In this document: positions 36,301 through 62,138 of the stretch, piece by piece
How positions within the stretch are numbered: position 1 is the first letter of the stretch
Layout of the letters: the number at the start of each line of letters is the position of its first letter
Virus record (IMG/VR): IMGVR_UViG_3300020178_000002
Location: 248,001 to 312,000 of that record
Direction: 5' to 3' (one strand)
DNA: 64,000 nucleotides
The notes under the pieces: model-generated
Databases searched by the model: none
The model's input: only the letters and a program-made list of their open reading frames with translations
Told to the model about the DNA's origin: nothing
Translations under genes and position numbers: made by a program

Positions 36301-37305
36301 ATTTGCTCCATCTGATAAATCTAGGGTTGATATGATCCTATTCTCAAAGTTAGCTCCATTATGGACAATGAAATGATTATTAGCAGCACCAGCTATGGTG
36401 ACATCATTTAGATCATTGAGTTCAGATACAGAGCTTACTAATCCAGGTGCAAAAGAACCATTGTTATAAACAATAGTTTCTCCATTTTGGATATTCTGAA
36501 TACTCACATCAGAGAGAAGTCCGATGCTAGGCAATGCTGTGAGGTTTGAACCATCTAAAGCAGGCAGTGTGTTTTGAACAGTGATTTCTAAGACATTGCC
36601 AGCGTTTGTACCAAAGTCTTTTGTTGAAGCAGTTCCTAATGCTGGGGTGTCTGCTAGATCATTGTAAGAGAGTGCTTGGTTTACAAAGCTAACACCATTG
36701 TGTCTTAAAACTTCTCCATCTAAAGCACCTGCAACTACAACATCAAGTAGGTTATCAATAGAGAGATGGTCTATAGTAACACTTCCAGATATTTGAGAGT
36801 TGTCGTCATCATAAGTCCAAGTTATGCCCCCACCATCGGTAAACATTGCCCCAACAAAGTCTTCAATATTTTCTTGGGTGAACCCACCACCACCATTAGC
36901 AGGGTCTACTTGTTGGAATACTCCACCTACTGCTTGTAGTATTTTTCCATTTACAATCCCATCGCCCAAATCTACATCTGTGAGTTCACCTATAGAAGTT
37001 GCATTGAGTATGCCCAGATTTGTTCTTGCATCAGCTTGAGCTTGTACTCCGAGATCTGCAATCTCAGAGAGTACGTTATCGGCCACAAGGAAGTTTTGAG
37101 GGTTGCTTCCATTCAAGGTTTCAATCTCGATTATTGCGTCTTGAATTGCAGCATGGACTTCTGCTGGATAATCGTTTGTCCAAACAACTCCATTTCTTCG
37201 GATATTTCCAACAGAGGTAAAACCATTTTCATCAGAAGTTACTGTGAAAGTGTAAACCCCAAAAGAAGTGACTACTTCATAGTTCTTACTAATTGCATCT
37301 GCCAT
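30340..37305 (-). CDS. Long fibre protein (2321 aa)
   Basis: Repeats LxDLxDV, GTDVQAQ, ARTxLGLG, PxAPTA...TTQxATTAFV and E.VQDxVG; C-terminal DYG motifs. Confidence 0.8.
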   Translation of the reverse strand: MADAISKNYEVVTSFGVYTFTVTSDENGFTSVGNIRRNGVVWTNDYPAEVHAAIQDAIIEIETLNGSNPQNFLVADNVLSEIADLGVQAQADARTNLGILNATSIGELTDVDLGDGIVNGKILQAVGGVFQQVDPANGGGGFTQENIEDFVGAMFTDGGGITWTYDDDNSQISGSVTIDHLSIDNLLDVVVAGALDGEVLRHNGVSFVNQALSYNDLADTPALGTASTKDFGTNAGNVLEITVQNTLPALDGSNLTALPSIGLLSDVSIQNIQNGETIVYNNGSFAPGLVSSVSELNDLNDVTIAGAANNHFIVHNGANFENRIISTLDLSDGANLLTNASSAGDLSDIDFGAGLVNGKILQVVGGVLVQQDPPNTGFTQEEVEDIVGAQFSHLNHSTGITFAYDDPSSEVRATLSNSLQDIVNVGHAVNNILISDGLNFGLNTPAQARTALGLEIGTDVQTQSAQLDILAGLNNGNNNFIVGNGNQFTILSGQDARNALGLGTASTSATGDFLASGSGLNDLSDVSLNGNAPSQFLVNNGFGNYLNRTISTTDLSNGSKVPLLNNNDELVLTNVLKPNGGINVSNLFTVDGLTGNTAVLGTLDVDGLSSMDGGLNVINPLTDAVSLSITPNGNNATINSAGGDVSFSAINISTTGTLNAGATTVNSLSTSSISIPDNNGAALVVAEGANAYLTFNTTDNTESIIFGKVFTAQSGSSIGNLVLADNSITTSNNGGIDFGVNQINIGGDLIVGNNAFVVNALNGNTGVTGNFSVNGISTLSSGANLNNQNIGNVDDIELNTISAKGNLVQLNITDNQPIALKVEESTNNVSYIEVDTTDGAEEIRLLKPVEIDGTMDISSGSIVDSTGTIDFGNTSLTTGGDITVQNLTVNGVQNINNQNNLAVADSVIELNNGFVGNNANDLGFLLTRGDLDDAVIFWDEGDDTFRLALHSGAVDVNTTDFSAVAGISDANLRLGNVSSQGNISATGSLSITSTGTILAPAANANDNHIVTSAWVRALTVSDFTGSTESIQDVVGAQFAHANHSAGITFAYTDDGGVNDGNVTATLQASLVSIAGLNPQAANKIIYTTGANTYATADITQQGRDLIASADPVAHLNLEIGTDVQAQNARLEEISAIAQPTADNFLAGDGNDLVLKTPAQARTSLALDQVNARVTLGFGTAVTNDTGDFLATGSAINSLSDVTITNDPQAGTPLTNQVLVYTGNNVFENAQLSSSQLSDGTSLIKTTSSINDLNDVSTANKAQDKILVFNAQGSLIVGDNTIVEEVQDAIGSMINAGQQTDITVTYDDINNRIDYSVDATVARLNNPALTGVPTAPTAAVNSNTTQLATTAFVVAEIADFESGLGTASTSNVGDFLASSLVTLANPQAGEALIYDAVNATFDNVALSTTNLSDSNNIAFLNANQTITGDLTVSGDIDLTGAVITANNPANNSVGREVATASFVRAVVAQVGGNITQLSHLSDVDANLAPNNGEALIYTTANGANVFESVALSSANISDIDASNAQAGHTLVWDGVSTFVAQAPTESAQDAVNELFITNGSAHTDITFTYNDAANTMTASVDNTVARLAGPTFTGVPEAPTAVVNTNTTQIATTAFVVAEIGDLGLGTASTSNVGDFLAAGSNLDDLGDVSIANPALNHFIVSDALGAFSNRTISSSDLSDTANISLLNANQTFTGTVQVTTQAASDNSTKIASTAYTDRQVSDSITALALGTASQNNTGDFLSAGSNLDDLGDVSIANPALNHFIVSDALGAFSNRTISTTDLSNSANIPLLNNGNLTLGGSLSVAEISLADNQPSALNITEGGNGYLTFVTTNTAEEIILGENVSLDKNITVTGTGTITAPAQNANATQIVTAAWVRGLTVNDLTDTTELVQDIAGGLLVNNNHDTGISTTYDDANGELTIQLTGNLSDISGLANTDGNFIVGDGNNFVAQTKAQVKATLDLEIGTDVQAQDTLLQEFADLNPAGNNKLFHTTGAGALTTATITAAGLALLDDADNTAQRTTLGLAIGTDVQAQDTLLQEIADLNPLGNNQLLHTTGAGALTNSTITAAGLALLDDADNTAQRTTLGLGNVSTLDTTITGGVADAGKVVITDGNGKLGAISGENLTNLGSISTHSDVNINTGAFTGDEVLVWDSNAGEFVAENFDEKARDVVATALAGGTATGVDSLTFANNDAGDVIDVSVEVSSNNLTDVNAAPDTDKQVLRYTTANGLNKYVPTVLGTSTDYDVGTSPGELILLSTPTQSNVNAVADLIVLGRVIETIDYGSVADAFVLNTDFSTDWNGSGLNDAVVYAKEDYGVLVS

Positions 37306-37401
37306 AATTATTGCCTCTCTTATGATGTCTCTATTTTATTAATCTTATTAAAAGACTATTAGAACACAGTATAACTCATTAGCTGATTTAAGGAGATTAT
37401 A

Positions 37402-38358
37402 ATGAATAAGGTAAGAGCTTCTTTTCTAAACCTGGTAGAGGAAAAAGGCGGTTTTGTGTGCCATCACGCACACTTTGATAAATCTCATTTAATAACCCCA
37501 GAGATTCTGAGAAAAAGTCAATCTAGCCTTCAAGAAAAGTGGTACATATACAGAGACTTGAAAGAATCTTACACTAGGGAAGATCTAAGACTTCGTATGG
37601 TTCGATGTATTGAAAAAATGCGATCTCAAGGTGTTAACAAATGTAAAACCTTCATAGATGCAGACCAGATTGTAGGTTTGACTCCTATGGAAGTTGCTGT
37701 TGAGCTAAAGAAAGAGTACTCAGCTAAAGGCTTTGATCTGCTTCTGGCAGTTCAGCCTCTTGAGGGAGTTCTAAATCCTTTTGCTAGAGAGATTTTTGTT
37801 AAAGCCTGTGGAATGGCTGACGTTGTTGGAGGTCTTCCAGATAGAGACAAAGAGCCACTATCTCATATGGACTTTATTTTAAGCCTAGCAAAAGATTTAG
37901 GCAAAGACCTTGATGTTCATGTTGGTCAAAACAACATACCCTCTGAACAAGAATCCGAGATGGTTGTTGATAAAGTTAAAGAGCATAACATGGAGGGTAG
38001 AGTGAACTTGGTTCATGCAATCTCTTTATCTTGCCAAACCAAAAGCAAGAGGAAAGAGGTTATACAAAAGATTAAAGATACCAATACAGGTGTGATTGTG
38101 TGCCCCTCTGCTGCAATAAGTATGAAGCAACAATCTAATGTTTCCGCCCCTATCCATAATTCCATAGCTCCTGTCTTAGAAATGCTTGAAGCTGGTGTAG
38201 ATGTAATGTTAGGTGTGGATAACATACATGACCTATTCATGCCTTTGGTTGATGGAGACCTATGGTTTGAGTGTAGGCTGATGATGGAAGCAATAAGATG
38301 CTATGACTTGGAACTGATTTCTAAAATAGCTTCAAATAAAAGAGGTTTTAATGATTAA
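37402..38358 (+). CDS. Metal-dependent amidohydrolase, cytosine deaminase-like
   Basis: HHAHFDK, DVHV, VHAIS, IVCP and GVDNIHD metal-ligand pattern of the CodA family; exact substrate uncertain. Confidence 0.75.
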   Translation: MNKVRASFLNLVEEKGGFVCHHAHFDKSHLITPEILRKSQSSLQEKWYIYRDLKESYTREDLRLRMVRCIEKMRSQGVNKCKTFIDADQIVGLTPMEVAVELKKEYSAKGFDLLLAVQPLEGVLNPFAREIFVKACGMADVVGGLPDRDKEPLSHMDFILSLAKDLGKDLDVHVGQNNIPSEQESEMVVDKVKEHNMEGRVNLVHAISLSCQTKSKRKEVIQKIKDTNTGVIVCPSAAISMKQQSNVSAPIHNSIAPVLEMLEAGVDVMLGVDNIHDLFMPLVDGDLWFECRLMMEAIRCYDLELISKIASNKRGFND

Positions 38359-39592
38359 AAGATATGAACACCCTAAGATTAAAAAGATCTTCTCTCCTGA
38401 ACAGAGGCTTTCTTATTTTGTAGACATCGAAAGATACGCATCTCTTTATCATGGAGTTGAAATACCAGATATAAACATAGATTCCCTGCTTTGTAGTATG
38501 GATGAATGTGAAAAGATCACGAAGCATGAGACAGTTGCTTTCTTACAAGCTCTTTCTTATCAGTTAGATGATATTTCAAATCTTCACTTTGGTATGACAA
38601 GCTCTGATGTTTTAGATACCTGTCTTTCTTTACAAATCAAAGAAGCATCTAGTGTTTTGGAAGATGAGATAAAGATTCTTCTCACTAGCCTTAAGACTTT
38701 CTGCTTAAAGAATAAGAATACTCTTATGGTAGGTAGATCTCATGGTAAAGCAGGTGAATTGATCAGCTTAGGGTTTTCTTTTCTTTCTTACTATAAAGAA
38801 TGGGAGAGGAACTTAGATAGACTCACTCATGCTAGAGAAGAAGTCTCTTATGGGATGGTTTCTGGTCCTATGGGTAACTTTTCAAACATTAATAGAGAGA
38901 AAGAAGACTTTATTTGCTCTAGATTAGGGATCAAACCAGAGCCTGTTTCAACTCAAGTTATTCCAAGAGATAGACATTCCTATCTTATGTGTGTACTAGG
39001 CATCATTGGAGCATCTCTCGAAAGATTATCCACACACATTAGAAACTTGAGTCAGTCTGGCATTGAAGAAATTTCTGAATCCTTTTCCGTTTCCCAAACA
39101 GGGAGTTCGGCTATGCCACATAAGAAGAACCCTATCTTATCAGAAAATGTGACAGGACTTGCCAGACTGTTAAAAAGTTATGTCTCTCCCTCTTTAGATA
39201 ATGTTTCCCTCTGGTTTGAAAGGGATATGAGTCATTCTTCTGTTGAGAGGGTGACAATAGAAGATGCGTTTCACTTATCATGCTTTGCAGTCAAAAGAAT
39301 GACTTTTGTCATTGATAGGCTTTCTGTTCATAAAGAGTCTTTGGATAAAAACATTGAAAGAGAAGGCAATCACATTTATTCTCACTCTGTTCTTTGCCAT
39401 CTTATGAAAAAAGGTGTAGACAGACATGAGGCATATCGCTTCATTCAAAAGGTCACTCAGGGAAACAAGGACTTATTTAAAGAATTAGAGACTTCCTATC
39501 CCGAGCATAAGGTAGGACAAGTGGTATTATTTAATGAATGTGTGTCAAACATAGATCATATTTTTAGGAATGTATTTGGAGATTCTAAATGA
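38351..39592 (+). CDS. purB: Adenylosuccinate lyase
   Basis: HFGMTSSDVLDT, GRSHG, STQVIPRDRH, GSSAMPHKKNP and ERDMSHSSVER. Confidence 0.95.
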   Translation: MIKRYEHPKIKKIFSPEQRLSYFVDIERYASLYHGVEIPDINIDSLLCSMDECEKITKHETVAFLQALSYQLDDISNLHFGMTSSDVLDTCLSLQIKEASSVLEDEIKILLTSLKTFCLKNKNTLMVGRSHGKAGELISLGFSFLSYYKEWERNLDRLTHAREEVSYGMVSGPMGNFSNINREKEDFICSRLGIKPEPVSTQVIPRDRHSYLMCVLGIIGASLERLSTHIRNLSQSGIEEISESFSVSQTGSSAMPHKKNPILSENVTGLARLLKSYVSPSLDNVSLWFERDMSHSSVERVTIEDAFHLSCFAVKRMTFVIDRLSVHKESLDKNIEREGNHIYSHSVLCHLMKKGVDRHEAYRFIQKVTQGNKDLFKELETSYPEHKVGQVVLFNECVSNIDHIFRNVFGDSK

Positions 39593-40806
39593 GTACAACG
39601 GCAGTTATAGGTGGTCAATGGGGTGATGAGGGTAAAGGTAAGATTGTTGACTTTCTTTCAGAAGGTGCAGACTATTGTGTTCGCTTTCAAGGTGGCAGTA
39701 ATGCAGGTCATACTATCACAGTAAACGATCAAGTGTATAAGCTCAGATTATTGCCCTCAGGAGTCCTTAGAGGTTCAACGGGTGTTCTTGGTGCTGGTAT
39801 GGTTATAAACCTTGATGTGCTTCAATCTGAAGTCTCTTATCTACAAGAAAGAGGGATAGAGCCAAAGTTCTTTATTGATCATAGAGCACATCTTGTCACT
39901 CCAGAGCATATTTCCAATGATGTTCTTCGAGAGAAAGAATCTGGAAACAGAATTGGCACTACAAGAAATGGTATTGGCCTTTGTTATGAAGATAAAGCAA
40001 GAAGAACAGGTCTTCGTGCAGGAGATCTACTAACAGACTTTGATTCTAAGGTAGATGCCTTTCTTAAGTTTTATGATAACAGCCCTCGTGTTAAGTTAGG
40101 TCTGGTGAAAGTTTTGAATGAGTGGAAAGACACTTGGTCTAAATACATTCGTACAGACCTCACAGATGTTCTATATAGAGCAATGCATATAGAAGATAAG
40201 GAAGTTGTTATTGAAGGGGCACAGGGGACTCTCTTGGATGTTTCACATGGAACATATCCTTTCGTTACATCTTCTCATACAATAGCCCCAAGCATTGCAG
40301 CAGGAGTAGGTGCTTCTTTACCAAGAGACTATAACTGCATTGGTGTTTTTAAAGCATACTGCACTAGAGTTGGCAAAGGGGGCTTCCCATCAGAAGATTT
40401 TACAGAAGATGGAGATGCTTTACAGAGAATCGGTAAAGAGGTAGGTGTTGTCACAAAGAGAGTTAGAAGATGTGGCTGGCTTAACCTTGATGATATGATT
40501 TATGCGAACCAGCTTAATGGCTTCACTTCAATTGTTTTAACAAAAGTGGATGTCTTAGATGGATTCTCTAAAGTTAAAGTAATGTATAAGGGTGATTTGC
40601 AAACTCTAGATGGTTGGGCAGGTTCAGGAGATGCCAAAACTTGGCTTGAGCTACCAGAGAATCTTATGAAGTTTATTGATTACATTCAAGAGAAAACAGG
40701 TGTTTCAGTTACCATGATTTCTAATGGTCCAGATCGCAAGGACACAATAATGCACCCTTTTTTAACTATGCCAAAACTTGAAACCACACCTAGCATGGAG
40801 CTTTAA
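39589..40806 (+). CDS. purA: Adenylosuccinate synthetase
   Basis: [38 protein letters not shown] and RRCGW. Confidence 0.96.
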
Positions 40807-40807
40807 T

Positions 40808-41860
40808 ATGAGAATTGAAACAGAGTCGAAGCTGGACTTCAAAGATGTATTGTTTAAGCCAAAGAGATCAACTCTGACCTCTCGAAAAGAAGTAGATCTA
40901 AATAGGGATTTCAAGTTCCCTCATAGTAATCGTGTCTGGAGTGGTGTTCCTATTGTAGCAGCCAACATGGACACTGTTGGAACTATTGAAGCAGGTAAGG
41001 TTCTTTCTCAGAACAATATGCTAACTTGTCTCCATAAACATTACACTGAAGATGAGTATGTAGACCTCTATAATTGGGTATATGCGAACCAAGGCTCTAC
41101 TTATGCTTCCTATTGGGCTTACTCTATGGGTATTTCAGATGAGGAGTTTGCTAGATTAGAATCAGTCCAGAAGAAAACTTCTGGTAAGATTACTACAATC
41201 TGTATTGATGTCGCTAATGGATATACTGAGAGGTTCATTAACTTTGTTTCTAAGGTTAGAAACAGATATCCAGAAGCGATTATTATTGCAGGTAATGTCG
41301 TGACTGCTGAAATAACAGAGCAGCTTATCCTAGCAGGTGCAGACATAGTAAAAGTTGGGATAGGGTCAGGGAGCGTTTGTACGACTCGTATTCAAGCTGG
41401 TGTAGGCTATCCTCAGTTGAGTGCAGTTATTGAGTGTGCAGATGCAGCACATGGTTTGAATGGTCGGATTATGTCTGATGGTGGTTGTACTTGTCCTGGA
41501 GATGTAGCTAAGGCATTTGGTGGTGGGGCTGACTTTGTAATGCTGGGTGGTATGCTTGCAGGTCATGTTGAGAACCTTAAGCTAGATGACCAAGGAAATG
41601 CTTTATTTTATGGTATGTCATCAGATACAGCTATGGACAAGTATCATGGTGGTGTTAACGAGTATCGCTCATCAGAGGGTAGGACAGTATCTCTTGACCA
41701 AAGAGGCAATATAAAAGACACCATTCAAGACATACTTGGTGGAGTTCGTTCAACTTGTACTTATATTGGTGCGAGTGAGCTTCGTGAGCTGAGTAAATGC
41801 ACGACTTTTATTCGTGTTTCTCAGCAGTACAACCCTGTGTATGAAAGCAAGACTGTTTAA
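40808..41860 (+). CDS. guaC: GMP reductase (E. coli GuaC-type)
   Basis: [24 protein letters not shown]-terminus, [31 protein letters not shown] and [14 protein letters not shown]; no CBS domains. Confidence 0.93.
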
Positions 41861-43047
41861 ACCTTAACAGGGTCTCGCTTATTCTTGTAATAAGCAGTTA
41901 TGATTTTAGCAGTGCCTGTATCCTTATCAAACTCAAAGGCTACAGTTAAGTTTTTGGTCATAGGGTCTGTCCACTCAGCTTGCATTCCATAATCTATAGC
42001 TGAGATTAAGTCTTTAGCTCTTAGGTTGTATTCATTCCTCTCGTAATACTTCTCAAGATTAAAGAAGAAAGATTTCAGTTTGTGTACTGAAATACCTCTC
42101 TGATCCATTCTGTATTGAGCATGTGAACTGATGCAGAATTGTTTAATCTTATTTAGACCACTTTTATTGCAATCTACATAGGTATAAACCTCTCTGGCTT
42201 CACTGTTAGGTATGTTCTGACCTTGTTCAAGCTTTTTGATGAGTCTTAGTTCAAGGTTGTGATCAGCGACATTTTTAATAATCCTGTCTCTGGTATGTTC
42301 TATCCCACCTGGTTTTCCTAAAGGGGGGACTAGATCAGCCTTTTTCAGAGTTTTCTTTAAATCTTGGATTTCTCTCTGGAGCGTTTTACTCAAATCCTTG
42401 ATCTCTTTCCTCGTTTTGTTCCCATCCTCCTCAATAGTTTCCTCTAATATGTAACTAGTTGAAAAAGAACCAAAGGCTTTTTTTTCTCTGCTAAGGGTTT
42501 TAATCTCTTGGTTGAGTTCGTTAAGCATCTTCGATGCAGTACGAATCTGAGAAGCTCTTTTACCTCTGCTGAAGAGTCTCTTTAAGAATCTGACCCCCTT
42601 GCCTACAAGGGAGTACTTCTCCTCGATTTTTTCTTTTAGGTCTTCAAGAACTGTTCCATACTCTTTGAGGTACTCAGGCTGACCCATTAGCTCACCTAAT
42701 TCAAAAGCAAGTTTTTCTAACTCTTTGTCTTTTTCTGCCTTAGAAATGTCTCTTTTCATTTCTTTTATCCTGAACTTACGCTCAATTTTTCGAGCTGCCT
42801 TGTCTTCTTTTTCTCTTTTAACTCCTTCAATGAACTTTCTTAGTCGGTAGTTATCTAATTTTTTTTGCTTAATGGTCGCTAAAAAGCCATCAAGTACCGA
42901 ACCATATTCTTCAACATACTCTGGTTGAGCCTGTAAGCCAACAACCTCTTTTTCTAGGTCATCTAGGTCTTTGTCATTTATTTTATCTCTAGATACACGC
43001 TTGCTGATGTCTTTTATAGCTTCTTCTCTTTCAAGTAAGGTCTGCAT
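41857..43047 (-). CDS. Modular protein: duplicated helical unit, [10 protein letters not shown] tag, C-terminal DUF4258-like putative RNase
   Basis: [15 protein letters not shown]...KIITAYY at the C-terminus; the tag module is shared with the adjacent gene. Confidence 0.55.
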
Positions 43048-43146
43048 ATCTTATCCTTTTTATTTTCCTTGGTTCTTGAGATCTCTAATCTCTTGGTTAA
43101 TTTCGTTAAGCATCTTCGATGCAGTACGAATCTGAGAAGCTCTTTT
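42517..43146. repeat. Identical 45-bp direct repeat (42517-42561 and 43102-43146) inside a shared ~70-aa module of two adjacent genes
   Basis: ttcgttaagcatcttcgatgcagtacgaatctgagaagctctttt is present twice. Confidence 0.9.
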
Positions 43147-44542: not shown

Positions 44543-45253
44543 ATGAAAATAATCTTATCTCCACCCTTCAGTAATTTGGCTTTAACAAACCTTTATCCTA
44601 ACACCACAAGAATCATTGGCACATACACTCTAAATAAGAGAAGGGGTTTGTGGAGAGTTCTTACTACCCTTAAGAAAACAAACAGGGGCTGGGTAAATAA
44701 TGTAGGCTTAAGGAATGGTGGTATTACGACAGTCCCAAACAAACCTTTCATAGTCTCTATTGCAGAGCTTGAGTCAGGTGATTGGTTACAGATGCTGAAT
44801 CATTTATCTACTTTGGATAATATTCTGGGGGTAGAGCTTAATATCTCTTGCCCTAATGCTCAGGTTAAAGGGGTGGGAGAAGATCTTCTGCGTAGCTTCA
44901 ATGATACTTTTAATAATGTATTTGTTAAAGTTCCTCATAACTACCCAGAGCGTCACCTTTTTAGCTTGATAGAGTGTGGTGCAAAGGTTATTCATATTTC
45001 TAATACGAAGAAGACAGAGGTTGGTTCTCTCTCTGGTGTGGAGTTGATACAAAAAAACCTCCAAACCATTAAAACAGTGAAGAAGCATTATCCTCATGTT
45101 AAAGTGGTTGGAGGTGGTGGTATATACAACTTAGAATCAGCTAAACAGTATATAGAAGCAGGTGCAGACTACATTTCTTTGTCTACAAGTTTGCTTAGAC
45201 CTTTTCGGACATATTTCCTAATTAAAGGATTACATACCTTCTTAGCTGACTGA
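44543..45253 (+). CDS. pyrD: Compact dihydroorotate dehydrogenase-like flavoprotein (family 1)
   Basis: NNVGLRNGG, ELNISCPN, HISNT, GSLSG, VVGGGGI and AGADYISL; only 236 aa. Confidence 0.75.
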   Translation: MKIILSPPFSNLALTNLYPNTTRIIGTYTLNKRRGLWRVLTTLKKTNRGWVNNVGLRNGGITTVPNKPFIVSIAELESGDWLQMLNHLSTLDNILGVELNISCPNAQVKGVGEDLLRSFNDTFNNVFVKVPHNYPERHLFSLIECGAKVIHISNTKKTEVGSLSGVELIQKNLQTIKTVKKHYPHVKVVGGGGIYNLESAKQYIEAGADYISLSTSLLRPFRTYFLIKGLHTFLAD

Positions 45254-45509: not shown

Positions 45510-45525
45510 CTAGGTGTCCTTTCGT

Positions 45526-46638
45526 ATGATTAAAAAAGTATGTGTTGGTTTAGATCTTCCTATTAATAGTTCTTTAGAAGACTATATAAAAATTATTAAC
45601 GAGGTTGGCTCTACAAGCTACAAAGTCAACCCTGCCTTTGTATCGCCCCATATAATGCCATTGCTTGCTTCTGAACTCAATATAAGGGGCTTCTTTTGGA
45701 TATATGATGGTAAGCTGGGTGATGTTCCTCATACAAATGAGAGATATGCAGATTATGTATTCAATCAGCTAGGTGCAAATGCAGTCACCTTAAATCCTTT
45801 TGTTGGTCTGGAGGCACTTGAGCCTTTCTTTCAATATGAAGATAGATACTCTTTTGTTCTTTGTAAAACTACCAACTCTGGAGATAAAAAAGCTCAGTCT
45901 GCTATGTATACAGACATAATTTCTTTAGCTTCCGAGAGAAGCAATGTAGGTATTGTCTACTCGTCACTAGATTCTGAGGGTTTGAGAGCAGTATCAGAAG
46001 GCAACTTTTTGATACTTGCACCTGGAGTGGGCTCACAAGGTGGCTCTGCTGCAGTAGATGAGTTGAATATTCTTTATACAGTAAGTAGGACTATAATAAA
46101 TTCACCTGACCCCCGTGAGACTTATCTTGAAATCAAAGGTGGTGTTGAAGCTATTCTCTTAGAGAGTTTGAGGTCTAGGGGTTTCATTAAAGAAGGTCAG
46201 TTTACACTTTCAAGTGGTCTTTCTTCTAACTACTATATTGACTTAAGGTGTCTTTCTTCTGACATAGACTTCTACCAAGAGGTATGTTTGCTTTTGTCTA
46301 GGCAAATAAAAACCCCTGATATACTAGGTGTCGAGAGTGGAAGCATATCTCTAGCTTCTTCTCTTGCTTGTCTTCTAGATAAACCTTTTGGTTTTGTTAG
46401 AAAGACTGCAAAGTCACATGGTACATCAAGGGTTGTTGAGGGTATCTCAGAGGGAGAAGCAACAGTTGTAGATGATGTTTTAACAACTGGTAGTAGTCTT
46501 ATAAAGGCTGTTTTAAATGCTAGAGCCTCTGGTATCTATGTCAGTGAAGTTTTAGTTGTAATAGAAAGAGTTGGTTATGGTGGTAGAGAAGCTCTTGAGA
46601 GTTATGGTATTAAAGTCAATTCTTTAGCGAGACTTTAG
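45526..46638 (+). CDS. pyrFE: Fused OMP decarboxylase + orotate phosphoribosyltransferase (PyrF-PyrE)
   Basis: OMPDC motifs DGKLGDVPHT, AVTLNPFVG and LAPGVGSQGG; OPRT motifs FTLSSG..SNYYIDLR, VRKxxKxHG and VVDDVLTTGSS. Start is 45514 or 45526. Confidence 0.9.
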   Translation: MIKKVCVGLDLPINSSLEDYIKIINEVGSTSYKVNPAFVSPHIMPLLASELNIRGFFWIYDGKLGDVPHTNERYADYVFNQLGANAVTLNPFVGLEALEPFFQYEDRYSFVLCKTTNSGDKKAQSAMYTDIISLASERSNVGIVYSSLDSEGLRAVSEGNFLILAPGVGSQGGSAAVDELNILYTVSRTIINSPDPRETYLEIKGGVEAILLESLRSRGFIKEGQFTLSSGLSSNYYIDLRCLSSDIDFYQEVCLLLSRQIKTPDILGVESGSISLASSLACLLDKPFGFVRKTAKSHGTSRVVEGISEGEATVVDDVLTTGSSLIKAVLNARASGIYVSEVLVVIERVGYGGREALESYGIKVNSLARL

Positions 46639-47382: not shown

Positions 47383-47775
47383 ATGCCTGTTCGTACTATA
47401 GTAGTTATTTGCTTATCTTTATCTTATCTGATGTTATTTGGTTTCATTGCTAGAGAACCCCAAGAGAGGTTTGTTCTATATGCTGTGCCAGAGTCTAAAG
47501 GTTGTATTTACCCAATAAACGAGATAAAGGAGACCAAAGTAGAGCTAAGGCATGTCATTCCCTATACGAAGATACATACTTGTAAATATGATGATTCCAA
47601 AAGACTCATTAGTGTTAAGACATATAACTTTGAGATAGGCTATCAAATGAAAAAGCCCACCCATGAAATAATCTATCATTGGGTGGGCACTAGGTTGAGT
47701 AAGGTCTCTTTTCGAGAGGCTTCTCATGGTCAGGGCGAAGTTGATGTTAGAGTCCTTGAGTTTTCAAAGAAATAA
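47383..47775 (+). CDS. Hypothetical membrane-anchored protein
   Basis: N-terminal TM segment MPVRTIVVICLSLSYLMLFGFI. Confidence 0.5.
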   Translation: MPVRTIVVICLSLSYLMLFGFIAREPQERFVLYAVPESKGCIYPINEIKETKVELRHVIPYTKIHTCKYDDSKRLISVKTYNFEIGYQMKKPTHEIIYHWVGTRLSKVSFREASHGQGEVDVRVLEFSKK

Positions 47776-48346: not shown

Positions 48347-48347
48347 A

Positions 48348-53100: not shown

Positions 53101-53744
53101 TTATTACAATATTAAGAAAGCCTTTAGAGGGAAGCGTAGCTGATAATGTACTTAAACATGGTTGTGGTGCTTTAAACATAGATGCGTCAAGAGTTTCCTC
53201 TCACGACAAAACAAAAAACCACAGTCGCAAGCCAGAGGCTTCTAAACCAAAAGGCATTTATGGAGACTCAAAAGAACAAGAGACACATCAGACAAAGGGT
53301 CAAGAGATTGGTAGGTTTCCTGCTAACTTTATTCTGACTCACCGAGAGGGCTGTGAGTTAAAAGGCACTAAGAAAATTAAAAGTTCTTCTGGAAGAGGTG
53401 CTGTGAAAAAAGAGTCCTCTGCTGAAAAGTTGGGTAATCAAGGATATTCTTACTCTAAAGAGTCAAGAAAAGAAGGTACTGTTATGATTTGTCATGTAGA
53501 TGAAGATGGGAAAGAGACAGTAGCAGATTGGGCTTGTGTAGAGGGTTGTCCTGTTAAAGAGATAGATCGACAAAGTGGTTCGATAAAGAGTGGTGGTCGC
53601 TCTGCCAAAAACTACGCAGACAGCGATTCTGATCGGCTTGTCTATGGAGGGTTCTCTGGAGTGGCGAAAGAAATACAGCCCTCAAGTGGTGGTGCTTCTA
53701 GGTTCTTTAAACAGTTTAAGAAAGAAGAATCAAATGAACCCTAA
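53097..53744 (+). CDS. DNA methyltransferase middle subunit, copy 1
   Basis: RKPLEGSVADNVLKHGCGALNID...GRFPAN...GGASRFF, the central blocks of phage beta-class N4/N6 MTases. Confidence 0.75.
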   Translation: MIITILRKPLEGSVADNVLKHGCGALNIDASRVSSHDKTKNHSRKPEASKPKGIYGDSKEQETHQTKGQEIGRFPANFILTHREGCELKGTKKIKSSSGRGAVKKESSAEKLGNQGYSYSKESRKEGTVMICHVDEDGKETVADWACVEGCPVKEIDRQSGSIKSGGRSAKNYADSDSDRLVYGGFSGVAKEIQPSSGGASRFFKQFKKEESNEP

Positions 53745-54186
53745 GCATCTTTCTGTAAGAGTGAAGCAATGTGACCTCATAGCTTCAAACTCTCCCTGTC
53801 CAAGAAGAAAAGTAGGTGCTCTTATCATAGACCCAGATAACAATGTTGTTATTAGTGAGGGGTATAATGGTACTCCTAGAAGTTCTGATAAGCAGTATTG
53901 TGGTGGCTCTGTCTGTAGAAGGACAGAGGATAATATAAAGAGTGGTACTAGGAATGATGTTGGATGTCACCACGCTGAAATGAATGCAATACTAAATGCA
54001 ACTAGGGTAGGGCAGTCTACTCTAGGTAAATGGTTAATTGTAAACTGTGACCCTTGTCTCATGTGTGCAAAAGCAATTCACCACAGTGGGATAGTGAGAG
54101 TTTACTGTCCTAAAGAGTTCTCTGGGAATCATAAAGAAGGTCTAAAATATCTTCTTGAAAACAGTATTGAGGTAGAAGATTTATGA
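53734..54186 (+). CDS. dCMP deaminase
   Basis: CPRRKVGA, GYNG, HAEMNA and PCLMCAK; start MNPKHL. Confidence 0.9.
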   Translation: MNPKHLSVRVKQCDLIASNSPCPRRKVGALIIDPDNNVVISEGYNGTPRSSDKQYCGGSVCRRTEDNIKSGTRNDVGCHHAEMNAILNATRVGQSTLGKWLIVNCDPCLMCAKAIHHSGIVRVYCPKEFSGNHKEGLKYLLENSIEVEDL

Positions 54187-59102: not shown

Positions 59103-59176
59103 GGGCCTTTAGCTCAGTTGGTTAGAGCACCCGACTCATAATCGGGCGGTCCTGGGTTCAAGCCCCAGAGGGCCCA
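59103..59176 (+). tRNA. tRNA with CAT anticodon, probably tRNA-Ile2 (reads ATA after lysidine modification); CCA not encoded
   Basis: Full cloverleaf; anticodon arm CCCGA-CTCATAA-TCGGG; body resembles bacterial Ile2 tRNAs. Elongator Met is not excluded. Confidence 0.85.
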
Positions 59177-59182
59177 CTACAA

Positions 59183-59216
59183 AGGAAGCATCTTTATGAG
59201 GGCTTCCTTTTTTTTA
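59183..59216 (+). terminator. Intrinsic terminator
   Basis: AGGAAGC...GCTTCCT hairpin followed by a T run. Confidence 0.65.
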
Positions 59217-59232
59217 TCTTGAGGGATGTCAC

Positions 59233-59466
59233 ATGGGAAGTACTAAACTTGTTATAGAAGAAACCACAAATGGGTGGGTGGTCAAAACACTTGATTGTGA
59301 AGGTGTGGAGATTACCTATGTTTATGAAGACCTTGAGGGTACTGATTCTTCTAGGGCTAAGGCTTTCAAGAGGTTATTGTTTGAACACTTCTCCCATGTG
59401 TTTGCTAGTAAACGTAAAGCTGGGTTAGATGTTATGGTTCTGGAGAAAGGTTGGGGAGAAGTATGA
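59233..59466 (+). CDS. Hypothetical protein
   Basis: 77 aa; GAGGG RBS. Confidence 0.55.
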   Translation: MGSTKLVIEETTNGWVVKTLDCEGVEITYVYEDLEGTDSSRAKAFKRLLFEHFSHVFASKRKAGLDVMVLEKGWGEV

Positions 59467-59672
59467 AAAGGACTTTATTTATTAAAAAGAATGGTGCTGA
59501 GTTCTACAAGGAACTGAGTAAAGAAGAGAGGAGACAGAAAGTCATCTCTTTAGAGGTACAGAAGAAAACTACAGCAATGCAAGTAGCTAAAGACCCTATG
59601 CTTTTGTTTGGGTCTGCTGTTAAATACAAGCGTTGTGTTGAAGCTGGTTTCTTGAGCTTCAAAGAAATCTGA
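59463..59672 (+). CDS. Hypothetical protein
   Basis: Start MKRT overlaps the previous stop. Confidence 0.5.
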   Translation: MKRTLFIKKNGAEFYKELSKEERRQKVISLEVQKKTTAMQVAKDPMLLFGSAVKYKRCVEAGFLSFKEI

Positions 59673-59713
59673 AAAAACTCCTTGTTTTAGTCTCGGCTTT
59701 GTATAATAACTAT

Positions 59714-59987
59714 GTCGGTCATGTTAGACCTTTGTTCTTTGACATTTAGAACAACTCCTTAGGGAGGCTTCCTACAGGTAAAGCTGTTGGGTTGTGTGGT
59801 ATGCCCTTTCACCTCTTTGGTTAGGAGGTGTCTCCTGCTCTGTTGTTCCGTGGAGTGGGGCAAAACGGAACGCTTATCATATCTGATCTCTATTTGGTGA
59901 GATTTAGGGTTCGATTCCCACAGATGTGCTAGGCCCTCTTAAATTTAGCTCATTTTGAACGGTGTGTATCTAACTTTCGAGGGTCTA
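59714..59987 (+). ncRNA. Structured non-coding leader: several hairpins, a shortened tRNA-like element (59878-59929) and a stem-closed RNA (59930-59987)
   Basis: GTTCCGT/ACGGAAC; CATATCTG/CAGATGTG with a GGG-TTCGATT-CCC T-loop; TAGGCCCTC/GAGGGTCTA. Confidence 0.55.
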
Positions 59988-59993
59988 ATTTTT

Positions 59994-60066
59994 GCTGGTG
60001 TAGCTCAATTGGCAGAGCAACTGATTTGTAATCAGTAGGTTATGGGTTCAAGTCCCTTCACCAGCT
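59994..60066 (+). tRNA. tRNA-Thr(TGT)
   Basis: Cloverleaf; ACTGA-TTTGTAA-TCAGT; no CCA. Confidence 0.92.
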
Positions 60067-60071
60067 TTTTT

Positions 60072-60143
60072 GGGTTGTTAGCTCAATGGTAGAGCACACG
60101 ACTTTTAATCGTTAGGTTCTGGGTTCGAGTCCCAGACGACCCA
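60072..60143 (+). tRNA. tRNA-Lys(TTT)
   Basis: Cloverleaf; ACGA-CTTTTAA-TCGT; no CCA tail after the discriminator. Confidence 0.92.
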
Positions 60144-60190
60144 CTTTGAATTTTTGCTAAAGTCATCACGCTGGTTCAAGGATAATAATA

Positions 60191-60496
60191 ATGAGCGAGA
60201 AAAAAACATATACGATAAGAAGAAAATATGGTTGGGATGTTTACTCATACCATGTTGGTTGGAAAGAGATTGAGCTAACTGAGGAACAAATCGCAGAGGT
60301 TCGTGCTAATCCTGACTTGCTTGATGACGATGAATGGTTAGATAAAGCCTTTGATTGGGTTGATATGGATGAGGAGGAGTTGGTCACAGACTCTTGGTGT
60401 AAGGGTGGTGTTGACCAAATTCCCCTAGAGACTGAGATTGATTTCTACATTGAGGATCTTACAGGAGAAGAAGATGAGTCGGAAGATCAAGGTTAA
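60191..60496 (+). CDS. Acidic hypothetical protein, paralog 1
   Basis: LVTDSWCKGGVDQIP motif shared with the next gene. Confidence 0.65.
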   Translation: MSEKKTYTIRRKYGWDVYSYHVGWKEIELTEEQIAEVRANPDLLDDDEWLDKAFDWVDMDEEELVTDSWCKGGVDQIPLETEIDFYIEDLTGEEDESEDQG

Positions 60497-60800
60497 ATAC
60501 GAGTGGACCATCTGGGCTCACTACGAAGGGTATAAAGAGATTGATGTTGATGAACACCCAGAGCTTTTAGAGAAGATCAAAGACAACTTTGAATCTATCG
60601 AGGACTTACAAACCGACATGAATACATGGGACTATGTTTGTGAGGATATTTGTGAGATCGAAGGTGAACATCTTGTATCTGATGAATGGTGTAAGGGTGG
60701 GGTTAATCAGATGCCTTTCAAGGTTGAACTAACCAACATTGAATTTGATGAACTTTTACATCCAGAAGAGGATGAAGAAGATGATAAACCTAAAGGATAA
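60474..60800 (+). CDS. Acidic hypothetical protein, paralog 2
   Basis: LVSDEWCKGGVNQMP; start MSRKIK after AGGAG. Confidence 0.65.
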   Translation: MSRKIKVKYEWTIWAHYEGYKEIDVDEHPELLEKIKDNFESIEDLQTDMNTWDYVCEDICEIEGEHLVSDEWCKGGVNQMPFKVELTNIEFDELLHPEEDEEDDKPKG

Positions 60801-61069
60801 TGGTTATGGGTGAGAGAGAAGACTTGATTGAAAGATACAAGGAAGCAAACCTAAAGAGAATAAAATATGGCTTTTTGAGTGCTATCTGTTTTCCTGTTGG
60901 GTTTCACTTGATTTTAATCATAAGTCATATTTTAGATATTGATCTTTTGTTTCCCATACTCTTTTTTATTGTTCTTCCTGTTTCTCAAATAGCTTTTATA
61001 GCTTTATGGTTTAGTAATCATACTCACCAGAGTGATTTAGAAGCAAGGATAAAAATAAAGTCAAAATAA
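60800..61069 (+). CDS. Two-TM membrane protein
   Basis: Two hydrophobic stretches in 89 aa. Confidence 0.55.
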   Translation: MVMGEREDLIERYKEANLKRIKYGFLSAICFPVGFHLILIISHILDIDLLFPILFFIVLPVSQIAFIALWFSNHTHQSDLEARIKIKSK

Positions 61070-61147
61070 TTGTTGGCTTCTAGTCCTTTATTGTATAATA
61101 CATACATGAGCTTGCCTTATAGCTTAATATTAAAGGCAACTCTTTAA

Positions 61148-61219
61148 GCATCAGTAGCTCAGTGGAAGAGCAGTGGCCTTCTAAGCCATTGGTCGTAGGT
61201 TCAAATCCTACCTGATGTA
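61148..61219 (+). tRNA. tRNA-Arg(TCT)
   Basis: Cloverleaf; GTGGC-CTTCTAA-GCCAT. Confidence 0.92.
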
Positions 61220-61221
61220 CT

Positions 61222-61298
61222 CGACAAAGCTCTCTCCCAGTATTTAAGGTTGGATTTAAGTCCTGTTAGACATGTTGAACAGCATTGGGGCTTTGTCG
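61222..61298 (+). ncRNA. Stem-closed structured spacer RNA
   Basis: 11-bp stem CGACAAAGCTC/GGGCTTTGTCG fills almost the whole inter-tRNA spacer. Confidence 0.5.
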
Positions 61299-61303
61299 TA
61301 CTT

Positions 61304-61376
61304 GCACTCATAGCTCAGTTGGAAGAGCACCACTTTCCTAAAGTGGGGGTCGCAGGTTCAAGCCCTGCTGGGTGTA
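61304..61376 (+). tRNA. tRNA-Arg(CCT)
   Basis: Cloverleaf; CCACT-TTCCTAA-AGTGG. Confidence 0.92.
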
Positions 61377-61377
61377 C

Positions 61378-61452
61378 TAGGTTCTCTATATTTTTTTGTA
61401 GTTTACAAGAAGCGAGAAAGAATAACTTTGCTAGAGTTGTTTAGAGAACCTA
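61378..61452 (+). ncRNA. Three-way-junction spacer RNA
   Basis: Perfect 11-bp stem TAGGTTCTCTA/TAGAGAACCTA enclosing two hairpins. Confidence 0.5.
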
Positions 61453-61458
61453 ACTTAT

Positions 61459-61500
61459 ACACTTGTTAGGTTTTTGCAGGTTCGAGTCCTGTCAAGTGTT
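61459..61500 (+). ncRNA. tRNA minihelix (acceptor stem + T arm only)
   Basis: ACACTTG-10 nt-GCAGG-TTCGAGT-CCTGT-CAAGTGT-T. Confidence 0.65.
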
Positions 61501-61503
61501 CTG

Positions 61504-61571
61504 GCTCTCCCCTACTTTATTTTTTAATCATTAGAGAAAATTAGGCAAAAGTAGAGGAGAGCTTTTTTTTT
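61504..61571 (+). terminator. Long stem-loop with T tract (terminator and/or small RNA)
   Basis: 14/15-bp stem GCTCTCCCCTACTTT/AAAGTAGAGGAGAGC followed by T9. Confidence 0.55.
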
Positions 61572-61626
61572 ATTTTTCCTTTCGTGTGTCGGTATAATTA
61601 AGTTGAGCATGTTGCTCAATCTCCAA

Positions 61627-61640
61627 ACACACACACACAC
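61627..61640 (+). repeat. (AC)7 dinucleotide run in a 5' UTR
   Basis: acacacacacacac immediately upstream of the AAAGGA RBS of 61658. Confidence 0.85.
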
Positions 61641-61657
61641 ATGAAAGGATATATCCT

Positions 61658-61861
61658 ATGGGAGATAATAAAAGGAACGCTTACGAGATCAGAGAGTCTC
61701 TTCTTGGTATGGCTATTGGCATTTTATCAGATCGAGATTCGAGACTGCGTGAGAATGAGTACTTGAAGCCAGAAGGCAATCGTCAGCCTGTTGAAGGTTA
61801 TGATGTTGATGAGGTTATCAAGATTGCTAATAAGCTAGACTCTTTTGTGAGTCAAAGTTAA
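61658..61861 (+). CDS. Small phage-type protein
   Basis: NAYEIRESLLGMA...DEVIKIANKLDSFVS pattern recalled from large phages; own -10 element and RBS. Confidence 0.65.
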   Translation: MGDNKRNAYEIRESLLGMAIGILSDRDSRLRENEYLKPEGNRQPVEGYDVDEVIKIANKLDSFVSQS

Positions 61862-61863
61862 TT

Positions 61864-61985
61864 ATATAAGTGCGGTGATAGCATACAGGGTTCTACTAAC
61901 TATTTTCGTATATACGACCCAGTGAGGAATAAGACAAGTTAGGAATACTCACTTACTTGCAGGTTTTAACCCTGCCACTTATATT
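61864..61985 (+). ncRNA. Enlarged tRNA-like RNA (acceptor-like stem + T-like arm, ~86-nt insert)
   Basis: ATATAAGTG/CACTTATAT stem stacked on GCAGG-TTTTAAC-CCTGC; internal stems TCGTA/TACGA and AGTGAG/CTCACT. Confidence 0.5.
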
Positions 61986-61994
61986 ACTAGCTTA

Positions 61995-62060
61995 CACCCC
62001 ACATGGTTTTCCATGTTAGCTAGGTTCAGGTCTTTTGTTGTTGTGATCTGAATTGGGGTG
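61995..62060 (+). ncRNA. Three-way-junction spacer RNA
   Basis: CACCCC/GGGGTG closes ACATGG/CCATGT and GTTCAGGTC/GATCTGAAT. Confidence 0.5.
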
Positions 62061-62065
62061 ACTAA

Positions 62066-62138
62066 GGACCATTCGTCTAGGGGTCTAGGACTCCAGCCTT
62101 TCACGCTGGCAACACGGGTTCAAATCCCGTATGGTTCA
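62066..62138 (+). tRNA. tRNA-Glu(TTC)
   Basis: Cloverleaf; CCAGC-CTTTCAC-GCTGG. Confidence 0.92.

What the first reader, a model, noticed from the sequence alone, without database searches (positions are those of the whole stretch)
37402..41860. Four-gene operon that would convert G and C nucleotides into A and U
Seen: a tightly coupled operon of codA-like deaminase, purB, purA and guaC. Established chemistry: GuaC turns GMP into IMP, PurA+PurB turn IMP into AMP, and cytosine deaminase turns cytosine into uracil; dCMP deaminase (53734) gives dUMP for dTMP. Every step runs GC to AT, and no guaA, guaB or pyrG is in the window. Inference: an AT-rich phage rebalances pools recycled from a more GC-rich host. 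It could also drain GTP or offset nucleotide-depleting defences. I do not recall this full set as a described phage module.
Basis: partly seen in the sequence, partly recalled or inferred. Interest (0 to 1): 0.75.

Follow-up and report, generated by a model that had tools for sequence, protein, structure and literature searches.

The report
Phage operon turning guanine nucleotides into adenine
A 312-kb marine phage carries intact purB, purA and guaC genes that together can turn GMP into AMP, but the "cytosine deaminase" in front of them belongs to an uncharacterised enzyme family that lacks the deaminase's catalytic residues and is linked by gene neighbourhood to UMP synthesis.

Summary
The four-gene operon is real (37402-41860, + strand, overlapping or abutting stop and start codons). 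It lies in a 39% GC jumbo-phage contig from salt-marsh and coastal metagenomes.

PurB, PurA and GuaC pass curated family cut-offs and keep their catalytic residues, so GMP -> IMP -> adenylosuccinate -> AMP is well supported. The trio recurs, in a different gene order, in at least two other divergent marine jumbo-phage contigs.

The first gene has a cytosine-deaminase/AtzC fold. It belongs to the uncharacterised PRK06886/HI_0842 family, in which CodA's Glu217, Asp314 and Gln156 are invariably Gln, Asn and Leu. In bacteria and phages it repeatedly sits beside pyrD and a pyrF-pyrE fusion. Most bacterial copies carry a CarB-type allosteric (MGS-like) domain. The "cytosine to uracil" step is therefore unproven.

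A PyrD-like gene and a UMP synthase lie 3-5 kb downstream. The region is a broader nucleotide-supply island rather than a pure GC-to-AT converter.

The GC-gap idea has indirect support. Cultured phages with this GuaC type (Cr30, Xoo-sp13, RAS14, XacN1) read 38-50% GC at the sampled loci, and their hosts are about 64-67% GC (host values recalled, not measured). The window's tRNAs read the phage's A-rich codons.

The host is unknown, and the other 248 kb of the genome were not examined.

The parts
37390..37395 (+). AAGGAG ribosome-binding site, 6 nt upstream of the first ATG. It lies in the 96-nt AT-rich gap that separates the operon from the divergent 2321-aa gene.
   Evidence: Sequence read. 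Only a weak promoter-like match (9 of 12) at 37299-37326.
37402..38358 (+). Amidohydrolase of the PRK06886/HI_0842 family (318 aa). It has a cytosine-deaminase/AtzC-like barrel without the beta-sandwich domain. The metal ligands H22, H24, H173, H205 and D273 are kept. CodA E217, D314 and Q156 are replaced by Q176, N274 and L120. Substrate unknown.
38351..39592 (+). purB, adenylosuccinate lyase (413 aa, Thermotoga/Bacillus type). The catalytic His (GRSHG), the TKHE His and the GSSAMPHKKNP serine loop are intact.
39589..40806 (+). purA, adenylosuccinate synthetase (405 aa, short Campylobacter/Helicobacter-like type). It has the GDEGKGK P-loop with the catalytic Asp and a TKVD guanine-specificity motif. 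It is not PurZ.
40808..41860 (+). guaC, GMP reductase (350 aa, E. coli/human type, no CBS domain). The GSVCTTR Cys/Thr loop and YRSSEGRT Glu are intact. This copy has no intein. Sibling strains with 99% identical flanking GuaC sequence carry a 142-aa intein between G188 and S189.
44543..45253 (+). Compact PyrD-like FMN barrel (236 aa). It keeps the class-1 dihydroorotate dehydrogenase ELNISCPN cysteine loop and a GGGGI loop.
45514..46638 (+). UMP synthase-like fusion: OMP decarboxylase (N-terminal) plus orotate phosphoribosyltransferase (C-terminal).
   Evidence: best solved match is Leishmania UMP synthase 3qw4, E 1e-35.
53734..54186 (+). dCMP deaminase (151 aa) with HAE and PCxxC zinc motifs.
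59103..62138 (+). tRNA cluster (context only): Met-CAT, Thr-TGT, Lys-TTT, Arg-TCT, Arg-CCT, Glu-TTC. These read the phage's preferred A-rich codons.

Best explanation
The operon is part of a nucleotide-supply island of a marine jumbo phage.

Shown by sequence:
- GuaC, PurA and PurB are intact and orthodox.
- By established chemistry they convert GMP to IMP (NADPH, releasing NH3), IMP plus aspartate plus GTP to adenylosuccinate, and adenylosuccinate to AMP plus fumarate. Guanine ribonucleotides are used both as substrate and as energy source to make adenine nucleotides.

Inferred:
- An AT-rich phage (39% GC, GC3 29%) uses this route to shift a G-rich ribonucleotide pool towards the A it needs. 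That pool would be host RNA breakdown products and free GTP/GMP, from a host that is probably more GC-rich.
- The dCMP deaminase pushes dC towards dU and dT.
- The first gene is not a proven cytosine deaminase. It is an uncharacterised CDA/AtzC-fold hydrolase that most likely serves the pyrimidine (orotate/UMP) branch together with the PyrD-like gene and the UMP synthase downstream. It may be a non-canonical dihydroorotase-type enzyme or a variant pyrimidine hydrolase or deaminase.
- The phage copy lacks the CarB-type nucleotide-sensing domain that nearly all the sampled bacterial copies carry. This would free it from feedback control.
For: Enzyme identity and residues.

Tight coupling.

Recurrence of the trio:
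- L104/L008 (247-kb contig, 41% GC): purB-guaC-purA.
- L105 (219 kb, 31% GC): purA-guaC, with purB 7 kb away.
- Protein identities to the window are only 46-51% (PurA, PurB) and 76-77% (GuaC).
- The three genes resemble different bacterial subtypes: Thermotoga/Bacillus-type PurB, Campylobacter/Helicobacter-type short PurA and E. coli/human-type GuaC. The operon therefore looks assembled in phages rather than copied whole.

GC-gap support:
- GuaC loci of cultured phages read 38% GC (Cr30), 40% (Xoo-sp13), 43% (RAS14) and 50% (XacN1). Their hosts Caulobacter, Xanthomonas and Stenotrophomonas are about 64-67% GC (my knowledge).
- 80 sampled IMG/VR GuaC contigs have a median GC of 39%: 79 lie at 34-46% and one at 21%.
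- The phage tRNAs read AGA, AGG, ACA, AAA and GAA. AGA plus AGG make up 81% of its Arg codons.

First gene:
- Family and residues.
- Neighbourhood with pyrD and pyrF-pyrE in five bacterial loci (L025, L029, L071, L081, L113) and in phage loci L009, L115, L004 and the window.
- MGS/CarB-allosteric-like domain in 78 of 80 bacterial loci.

Fragments identical to purB, purA and guaC occur in three metatranscriptome assemblies from the same habitat. This is weak evidence, because DNA carry-over is not excluded.
Against: - The host is unknown, so the GC gap is untested for this phage.
- The trio also occurs in a 31% GC contig (L105), whose host need not be GC-rich.
- The sampled GuaC contigs are related to each other and were chosen by similarity to a low-GC query. 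Their uniformly low GC is not an independent test.
- Only 64 of 312 kb were examined, so guaA, guaB or pyrG could lie elsewhere.
- GuaC uses GMP, not dGMP, so host DNA breakdown is not directly served.
- UMP synthesis is not AT-specific.
- For the first gene, structure places it far from dihydroorotases (VIA Z 16.7, against 38 for cytosine deaminase). No carboxylated-lysine position is evident. A dihydroorotase-type role rests on gene neighbourhood alone.
- In one related lineage (L004/L005), purB is absent and guaC is reduced to a 59-codon remnant while gene 1 and purA persist. The four genes are therefore not an obligate unit.
Confidence: 0.55

Rival explanations
1. Gene 1 is a working cytosine (or cytidine/CMP-type) deaminase, so the operon converts both G to A and C to U.
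For: - The best structural matches are cytosine and 5-methylcytosine deaminases (Foldseek TM 0.83, VIA Z 38).
- The metal ligands are kept.
- A salvage deaminase next to pyrD and pyrF/E, or under UMP-type regulation, would also make sense.
Against: - CodA Glu217, Asp314 and Gln156 are invariably Gln, Asn and Leu in 26 diverse members.
- CodA equivalog models score 60-89 bits against cut-offs of 403-483.
- The beta-sandwich domain is absent.
- The family (HI_0842) is uncharacterised.
Confidence: 0.2
2. This is a general nucleotide or energy boost with no compositional purpose. The phage simply raises adenylate (ATP) and UMP supply for a large genome and a long infection, as other huge phages do with nucleotide genes.
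For: - Purine and pyrimidine genes sit together.
- The trio occurs in phages from 31 to 41% GC.
- A true PurA also occurs in a 735-kb uncultured phage, LR756501.
Against: - GuaC specifically removes guanine nucleotides, which a general boost would not need.
- No G- or C-forming enzyme lies in the window.
- Cultured GuaC phages all show a large GC gap to their hosts.
Confidence: 0.2
3. This is counter-defence or host shut-off. The module drains GTP/GMP, or regenerates AMP from IMP after adenine-nucleotide-deaminating or ATP-degrading defences.
For: Only the chemistry supports it. PurA and PurB rebuild AMP from IMP, and GuaC plus PurA consume GMP and GTP.
Against: No defence or anti-defence gene was recognised next to the operon. 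The PADLOC library was not searched. The neighbours are biosynthetic.
Confidence: 0.05

Closest known systems
GMP reductase genes annotated in Caulobacter phage Cr30 and in Xanthomonas/Stenotrophomonas jumbo phages XacN1, Xoo-sp13, RAS14 and CM1
   Same: Same GuaC subtype (42-48% identity over 97% of the protein). The phage loci are low in GC (38-50%).
   Different: There guaC stands alone, with no purA, purB or PRK06886 gene within the 6-20 kb shown on each side. The phages are unrelated to this one: no DNA match, and structural proteins do not match. I found no paper on its role in phages.
PurZ/PurB pathway for 2-aminoadenine (Z) DNA in phages S-2L and PhiVC8
   Same: A phage-borne PurA-family synthetase works with an adenylosuccinate lyase.
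   Different: The window's enzyme scores 125 bits on the PurZ model (cut-off 300). It passes a PurA model and keeps the GDEGKGK loop. Solved PurZ chains match only at E 1e-11. GuaC has no place in the Z pathway.
Bacterial purine interconversion genes guaC, purA and purB
   Same: Same three reactions, with catalytic residues conserved.
   Different: In E. coli the three genes are scattered (my knowledge). Here they are translationally coupled in a phage, and they are of three different bacterial subtypes.
E. coli cytosine deaminase CodA and triazine hydrolase AtzC
   Same: Same (beta/alpha)8 barrel. The HxH, His, His and Asp metal site is kept. The HxHxDK and DNIxD motifs are shared with AtzC.
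   Different: The acid at the HxxE/HxxD position is Gln. Asp314 is Asn (as in AtzC). Gln156 is Leu. There is no beta-sandwich domain. It is a separate curated family with no known function.
Nucleotide-biosynthesis auxiliary genes of marine cyanophages and huge phages (pur and pyr genes, thyX, RNR)
   Same: Phage-encoded steps of host nucleotide pathways. pyrE-type genes are known in cyanophages (my knowledge).
   Different: Those sets are mostly de novo steps. A dedicated G-to-A interconversion trio was not found in the searched literature.

Membership tests
Cytosine deaminase CodA (EC 3.5.4.1) | Scores above the curated equivalog cut-off | tested here: not met
   PRK07583 88.7 bits against 403. 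PRK09230 60 against 483. PRK07572 62.8 against 438.
Cytosine deaminase CodA (EC 3.5.4.1) | Metal ligands His61, His63, His214 and Asp313, plus His246 | tested here: met
   H22, H24, H173, D273 and H205 are invariant in 26 members and align to CodA.
Cytosine deaminase CodA (EC 3.5.4.1) | Catalytic Glu217 (HxxE), Asp314 and substrate-binding Gln156 | tested here: not met
   They align to invariant Gln176, Asn274 and Leu120.
Cytosine deaminase CodA (EC 3.5.4.1) | N- and C-terminal beta-sandwich domain flanking the barrel | tested here: not met
   The protein is 318 aa and aligns only to CodA residues about 53-365 of 427.
PRK06886 / HI_0842 amidohydrolase family (function unknown) | Scores above the curated cut-off | tested here: met
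   366.1 bits against 340. The best Swiss-Prot fold match is HI_0842, at 36% identity.
Dihydroorotase (PyrC) | Sequence or fold membership in a dihydroorotase family; binuclear site with a carboxylated Lys after strand 4 | tested here: not met
   No PyrC model is among the hits. The best dihydroorotase fold match has Z 16.7 at rank 50. The strand-4 end is GGLPD, with no Lys.
Dihydroorotase (PyrC) | Gene neighbourhood with the following pathway steps (pyrD, pyrE, pyrF) | tested here: met
   Adjacent to pyrD plus a pyrF-pyrE fusion in L025, L029, L113 and L071, and to pyrF/E in L081. Near PyrD-like or PyrF-like genes in phage loci L115, L009, L004 and the window.
Dihydroorotase (PyrC) | Catalyses carbamoyl-aspartate <-> dihydroorotate | not testable with these tools
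   Needs an enzyme assay or pyrC complementation.
Adenylosuccinate lyase PurB | Equivalog score; catalytic His and Ser loop | tested here: met
   TIGR00928 341.3 bits against 326.2. GRSHG, TKHE and GSSAMPHKKNP align to the T. maritima enzyme 1c3u.
Adenylosuccinate synthetase PurA | Equivalog score; GDEGKGK P-loop with the catalytic Asp; (S/T)KxD guanine motif | tested here: met
   PRK01117 403.5 bits against 402, which is marginal. TIGR00184 366.9 is below its cut-off of 395.55. The GDEGKGK and TKVD motifs are present. 294 bits to C. jejuni PurA 3r7t.
PurZ (succino-amino-deoxyadenylate synthase) | Scores above the curated cut-off | tested here: not met
   NF038379 125.1 bits against 300. Solved PurZ chains match at E 4e-11 to 7e-11 over short stretches only.
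GMP reductase GuaC | Equivalog score; catalytic Cys, Thr and Glu; no CBS subdomain | tested here: met
   PRK05096 538.3 bits against 397. TIGR01305 500 against 492. GSVCTTR and SEG align to human GMPR2 2a7r at 444 bits. IMPDH models score far below their cut-offs.

The most novel reading that the evidence does not exclude
The PRK06886/HI_0842 amidohydrolases may be an unrecognised enzyme of pyrimidine nucleotide synthesis. One possibility is a mononuclear, cytosine-deaminase-fold replacement for dihydroorotase. In bacteria the enzyme is normally governed by a fused CarB-type nucleotide-sensing domain. Phages would carry it without that domain, next to a self-assembled GMP-to-AMP operon, to escape host feedback control and bias pools towards A and U/T.
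Probability: 0.3. Interest if true: 0.75.

Novelty: new variant of a known kind. Interest (0 to 1): 0.55.

Why it matters
Phage genes for nucleotide metabolism are well known. A dedicated, conserved route that turns guanine nucleotides into adenine nucleotides has apparently not been described for phages.

It offers a concrete, testable mechanism for how AT-rich phages cope with G-rich host pools. A culturable test system exists, because Cr30 and the Xanthomonas jumbo phages carry guaC.

The analysis also gives the first functional lead for a widespread uncharacterised amidohydrolase family. That family is present in at least 360 bacterial species' genomes and in many phages, and the lead ties it to UMP synthesis and to nucleotide-sensing regulation.

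Tried and rejected
- Modified-base (2-aminoadenine) pathway: rejected. The synthetase is PurA, not PurZ.
- Capture of a whole host operon: unlikely. The three purine genes are of different bacterial subtypes, their GC3 (27-31%) matches the phage, and no purA or guaC lies near the amidohydrolase in 80 bacterial loci; one weak PurB-like match (25% identity) was seen in L036.
- Near-DNA search of known phages: no match. The 783-aa conserved protein matched only one uncultured 485-kb phage, so no cultured relative and no host could be inferred.
- Conserved neighbours of the MGS-fused bacterial amidohydrolase: none beyond within-clade synteny.
- Riboswitches or other RNA families around the operon: none.
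- Promoter and terminator scans: no more hits than in shuffled sequence.
- Literature: nothing on a phage purB-purA-guaC module, on PRK06886, or on phage GMP reductase function. HI0842 has only an automatic 'AtzC-like' label.
- Organism names for the closest GuaC and amidohydrolase clusters: none on record.
- Metatranscriptome contigs: exact fragments of purB, purA and guaC are present, but DNA carry-over cannot be excluded and coverage is sparse.
- IMG/VR GuaC survey: the 80 loci returned exclude the closest relatives and are biased by similarity. I use them only as a hint.


Full report
WHAT THE WINDOW IS

The window is the last 64 kb of a 312-kb IMG/VR contig, IMGVR_UViG_3300020178_000002. 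Its GC content is 39.1%.

It has phage character:
- two tandem ORFs of 2344 and 2321 aa, one with an Mtd_N domain;
- a PIN-PhoH fusion;
- a peptidoglycan amidase;
- DNA methyltransferases;
- a protein containing an intein;
- six tRNA genes;
- many ORFs with no family match.

Exact copies occur in salt-marsh metagenomes, and slightly diverged copies occur in marine metagenomes. No cultured phage resembles it at the DNA level. One conserved 783-aa protein matches only an uncultured 485-kb phage.

THE OBSERVATION

Four + strand ORFs fill 37402-41860. They are bounded upstream by the divergent giant gene and downstream by a convergent, 4-nt-overlapping ORF.

The junctions are tight:
- Gene 1 and purB overlap by 8 nt.
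- purB and purA share ATGA.
- The purA stop and the guaC ATG at 40808 are 1 nt apart.
- AAGGAG precedes the first ATG.

guaC most likely starts at ATG 40808 (350 aa) rather than at the TTG at 40778. This follows from homologue lengths and from gene calls in sibling contigs.

THE THREE PURINE ENZYMES

All three are orthodox.
- PurB passes TIGR00928 (341 bits against 326). It keeps the catalytic His, the second His and the GSSAMPHKKNP serine loop of the T. maritima enzyme.
- PurA passes PRK01117 only narrowly (403.5 against 402). It is a short, Campylobacter/Helicobacter-like form. It has the GDEGKGK loop with the catalytic Asp and a TKVD guanine motif. It scores 125 against a cut-off of 300 on the PurZ model, so it does not make 2-aminoadenine.
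- GuaC passes both GMP-reductase equivalogs (538 against 397, and 500 against 492). It matches human GMPR2 at 444 bits with the Cys/Thr loop and the Glu intact. It lacks a CBS domain.

By established chemistry the three enzymes convert GMP to AMP, and they spend a second guanine nucleotide (GTP) in doing so.

THE FIRST GENE

By fold it is indeed cytosine-deaminase-like. The AlphaFold2 model has pLDDT 91. The best matches are Klebsiella 5-methylcytosine deaminase (TM 0.83), E. coli CodA (VIA Z 38) and AtzC (Z 35).

It fails the tests for being CodA:
- CodA models score 60-89 bits against cut-offs above 400.
- The beta-sandwich domain is missing.
- In an alignment of 26 diverse members the metal ligands are invariant, but CodA's Glu217, Asp314 and Gln156 correspond to invariant Gln176, Asn274 and Leu120.

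It belongs to NCBIfam PRK06886, 'hypothetical protein' (366 bits against 340). Its nearest reviewed relative is the uncharacterised H. influenzae protein HI_0842.

It shares HxHxDK and DNIxD motifs with AtzC. Many invariant Lys and Arg residues lie after strand 1 and in the following helix. This suggests an anionic substrate, but that is an inference.

CONTEXT OF THE AMIDOHYDROLASE FAMILY

The family occurs in at least 360 bacterial species' genomes, including Desulfobulbaceae, Thioploca/Beggiatoa, Competibacteraceae, Hyphomicrobium, Gemmataceae and Myxococcota. No bacterial copy is more than 55% identical to the phage protein.

In 78 of the 80 best loci the gene carries an N-terminal MGS-like domain. 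That domain's best family match is the allosteric domain of carbamoyl-phosphate synthase CarB.

Neighbourhood findings:
- The two unfused loci in that set (L025, L029) and a third unfused contig (L113) all place the gene beside a full-length pyrD and a pyrF-pyrE fusion.
- Two fused loci (L071, L081) have pyrF/E immediately downstream. In L071 the genes overlap by 4 nt and pyrD follows.
- In phages the gene lies next to a PyrF-like gene (L009) or 1.2 kb from a PyrD-like gene (L115, 296 kb). In the window and in L004 it lies within 7 kb of a PyrD-like gene and a UMP synthase.

The window's PyrD-like protein is compact (236 aa) but keeps the class-1 ELNISCPN cysteine loop. The fusion protein best matches Leishmania UMP synthase.

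The family is therefore tied to the orotate/UMP branch. The step just before PyrD is dihydroorotase, itself an amidohydrolase. However, this protein is structurally far from dihydroorotases (Z 16.7) and has no evident carboxylated-lysine position. A dihydroorotase-type role is a lead and nothing more. A variant pyrimidine deaminase or hydrolase remains possible.

IS THE MODULE MORE THAN CHANCE?

Yes.
- A 247-kb contig (L104, the same phage as L008; 41% GC) has purB-guaC-purA beside PIN-PhoH, dCMP deaminase and ThyX, with the amidohydrolase about 3.5-4.6 kb downstream of the trio.
- A 219-kb contig (L105, 31% GC) has purA-guaC, with purB 7 kb away.
- Identities to the window are 46-51% for PurA and PurB and 76-77% for GuaC, so the association is old.
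- The module is also labile. L004/L005 (47% GC) keep the amidohydrolase and purA, lack purB, and retain only a 59-codon remnant of guaC.
- GuaC alone is much commoner. More than 590 IMG/VR loci encode a relative. None of 80 sampled loci had purA or purB within 10 kb.

THE GC-TO-AT MOTIVE

In favour:
- Every cultured phage with this GuaC type has a low-GC locus: Cr30 38%, Xoo-sp13 40%, RAS14 43%, XacN1 50%.
- Their hosts (Caulobacter, Xanthomonas, Stenotrophomonas) are about 64-67% GC. These host values come from my own knowledge and were not measured here. The cultured examples represent only two independent lineages.
- The 80 environmental GuaC contigs have a median GC of 39%: 79 lie at 34-46% and one at 21%. 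They are related to each other and were selected by similarity to a low-GC query, so this is not an independent test.
- The window's tRNAs (Arg-TCT, Arg-CCT, Thr-TGT, Lys-TTT, Glu-TTC) read its favoured A-rich codons. AGA plus AGG make up 81% of Arg codons. This fits a host that under-supplies those tRNAs.
- No GuaA, GuaB, PyrG or canonical PyrC is in the window.

Against, or limiting:
- The host is unknown.
- 248 kb of the genome were not seen.
- The trio also sits in a 31% GC phage.
- UMP synthesis feeds C as well as U and T.
- GuaC works on GMP, not dGMP. The pool being shifted is therefore the ribonucleotide pool. Ribosomal RNA is G-rich whatever the genome GC (my knowledge), so the module could pay off even without a large genomic GC gap.

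VERDICT

- The G-to-A leg is sound and conserved.
- The C-to-U leg through gene 1 is unproven and disfavoured by the active-site residues.
- The operon is one part of a wider purine-plus-pyrimidine supply island.

I found no paper describing a phage purB-purA-guaC module or a role for phage GMP reductase. I rate the finding as a new variant of a known kind (nucleotide-metabolism auxiliary genes), of moderate interest. A more novel possibility attaches to the amidohydrolase family.

Noticed in passing
window 41371/41372 (between GuaC codons G188 and S189); L098, L099, L101 and L102 at 13407-14885: Sibling strains carry a 142-aa Hint-domain intein in guaC, two residues before the catalytic Cys (GIGSG | SVCTTR); the GuaC sequence on either side is 99% identical to the window's. 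The window copy has no intein. A marine metagenome contig shows the same 439-nt insertion. This is a presence/absence polymorphism of an intein in an auxiliary metabolic gene.
   Followed up: partly
L018-L097 (for example L022 5518-6945; protein P0062): Bacterial PRK06886 amidohydrolases are nearly all fused to an N-terminal MGS-like domain that resembles the IMP/UMP-binding allosteric domain of CarB. Phage copies lack this domain.
   Followed up: partly
window 23249-30283 and 30340-37305 (- strand): Two tandem giant ORFs of 2344 and 2321 aa. One has an Mtd_N (tropism determinant) domain, and matches within related loci show internally repeated segments. They are probably fibre or host-recognition proteins. 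The amidohydrolase gene lies directly beside this pair in several related phages.
   Followed up: no
window 4721-7843 (- strand): A 1040-aa protein interrupted by an intein with a LAGLIDADG homing-endonuclease domain. The host protein was not identified.
   Followed up: no
window 41857-43047, 43060-43995, 47747-48358 and 57492-58769 (- strand): Three pentapeptide-repeat proteins. In addition, a 396-aa ORF with a weak DUF4258 match shares a 97-aa segment (58% identity) with the C-terminus of the neighbouring pentapeptide protein.
   Followed up: no
L004/L005 10979-11155: A related 47% GC phage keeps the amidohydrolase and purA, lacks purB, and has only a 59-codon C-terminal remnant of guaC (81% identity) with no intact ORF. 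This looks like decay of the module.
   Followed up: partly
L107 and two contigs of 244-364 kb: A 339-aa GuaC clade (64% identity) lies in large phage-like contigs next to ribosomal protein S21, Hsp70, Hsp20, ClpS, heme oxygenase and a ferredoxin-dependent bilin reductase.
   Followed up: no
window 13298-14629, 51407-52792, 55590-56132 and 56722-57495: A PIN-PhoH fusion, a divergent GroEL-like chaperonin (461 aa), and two DNA N6/N4 methyltransferases, one with weak CcrM likeness.
   Followed up: no
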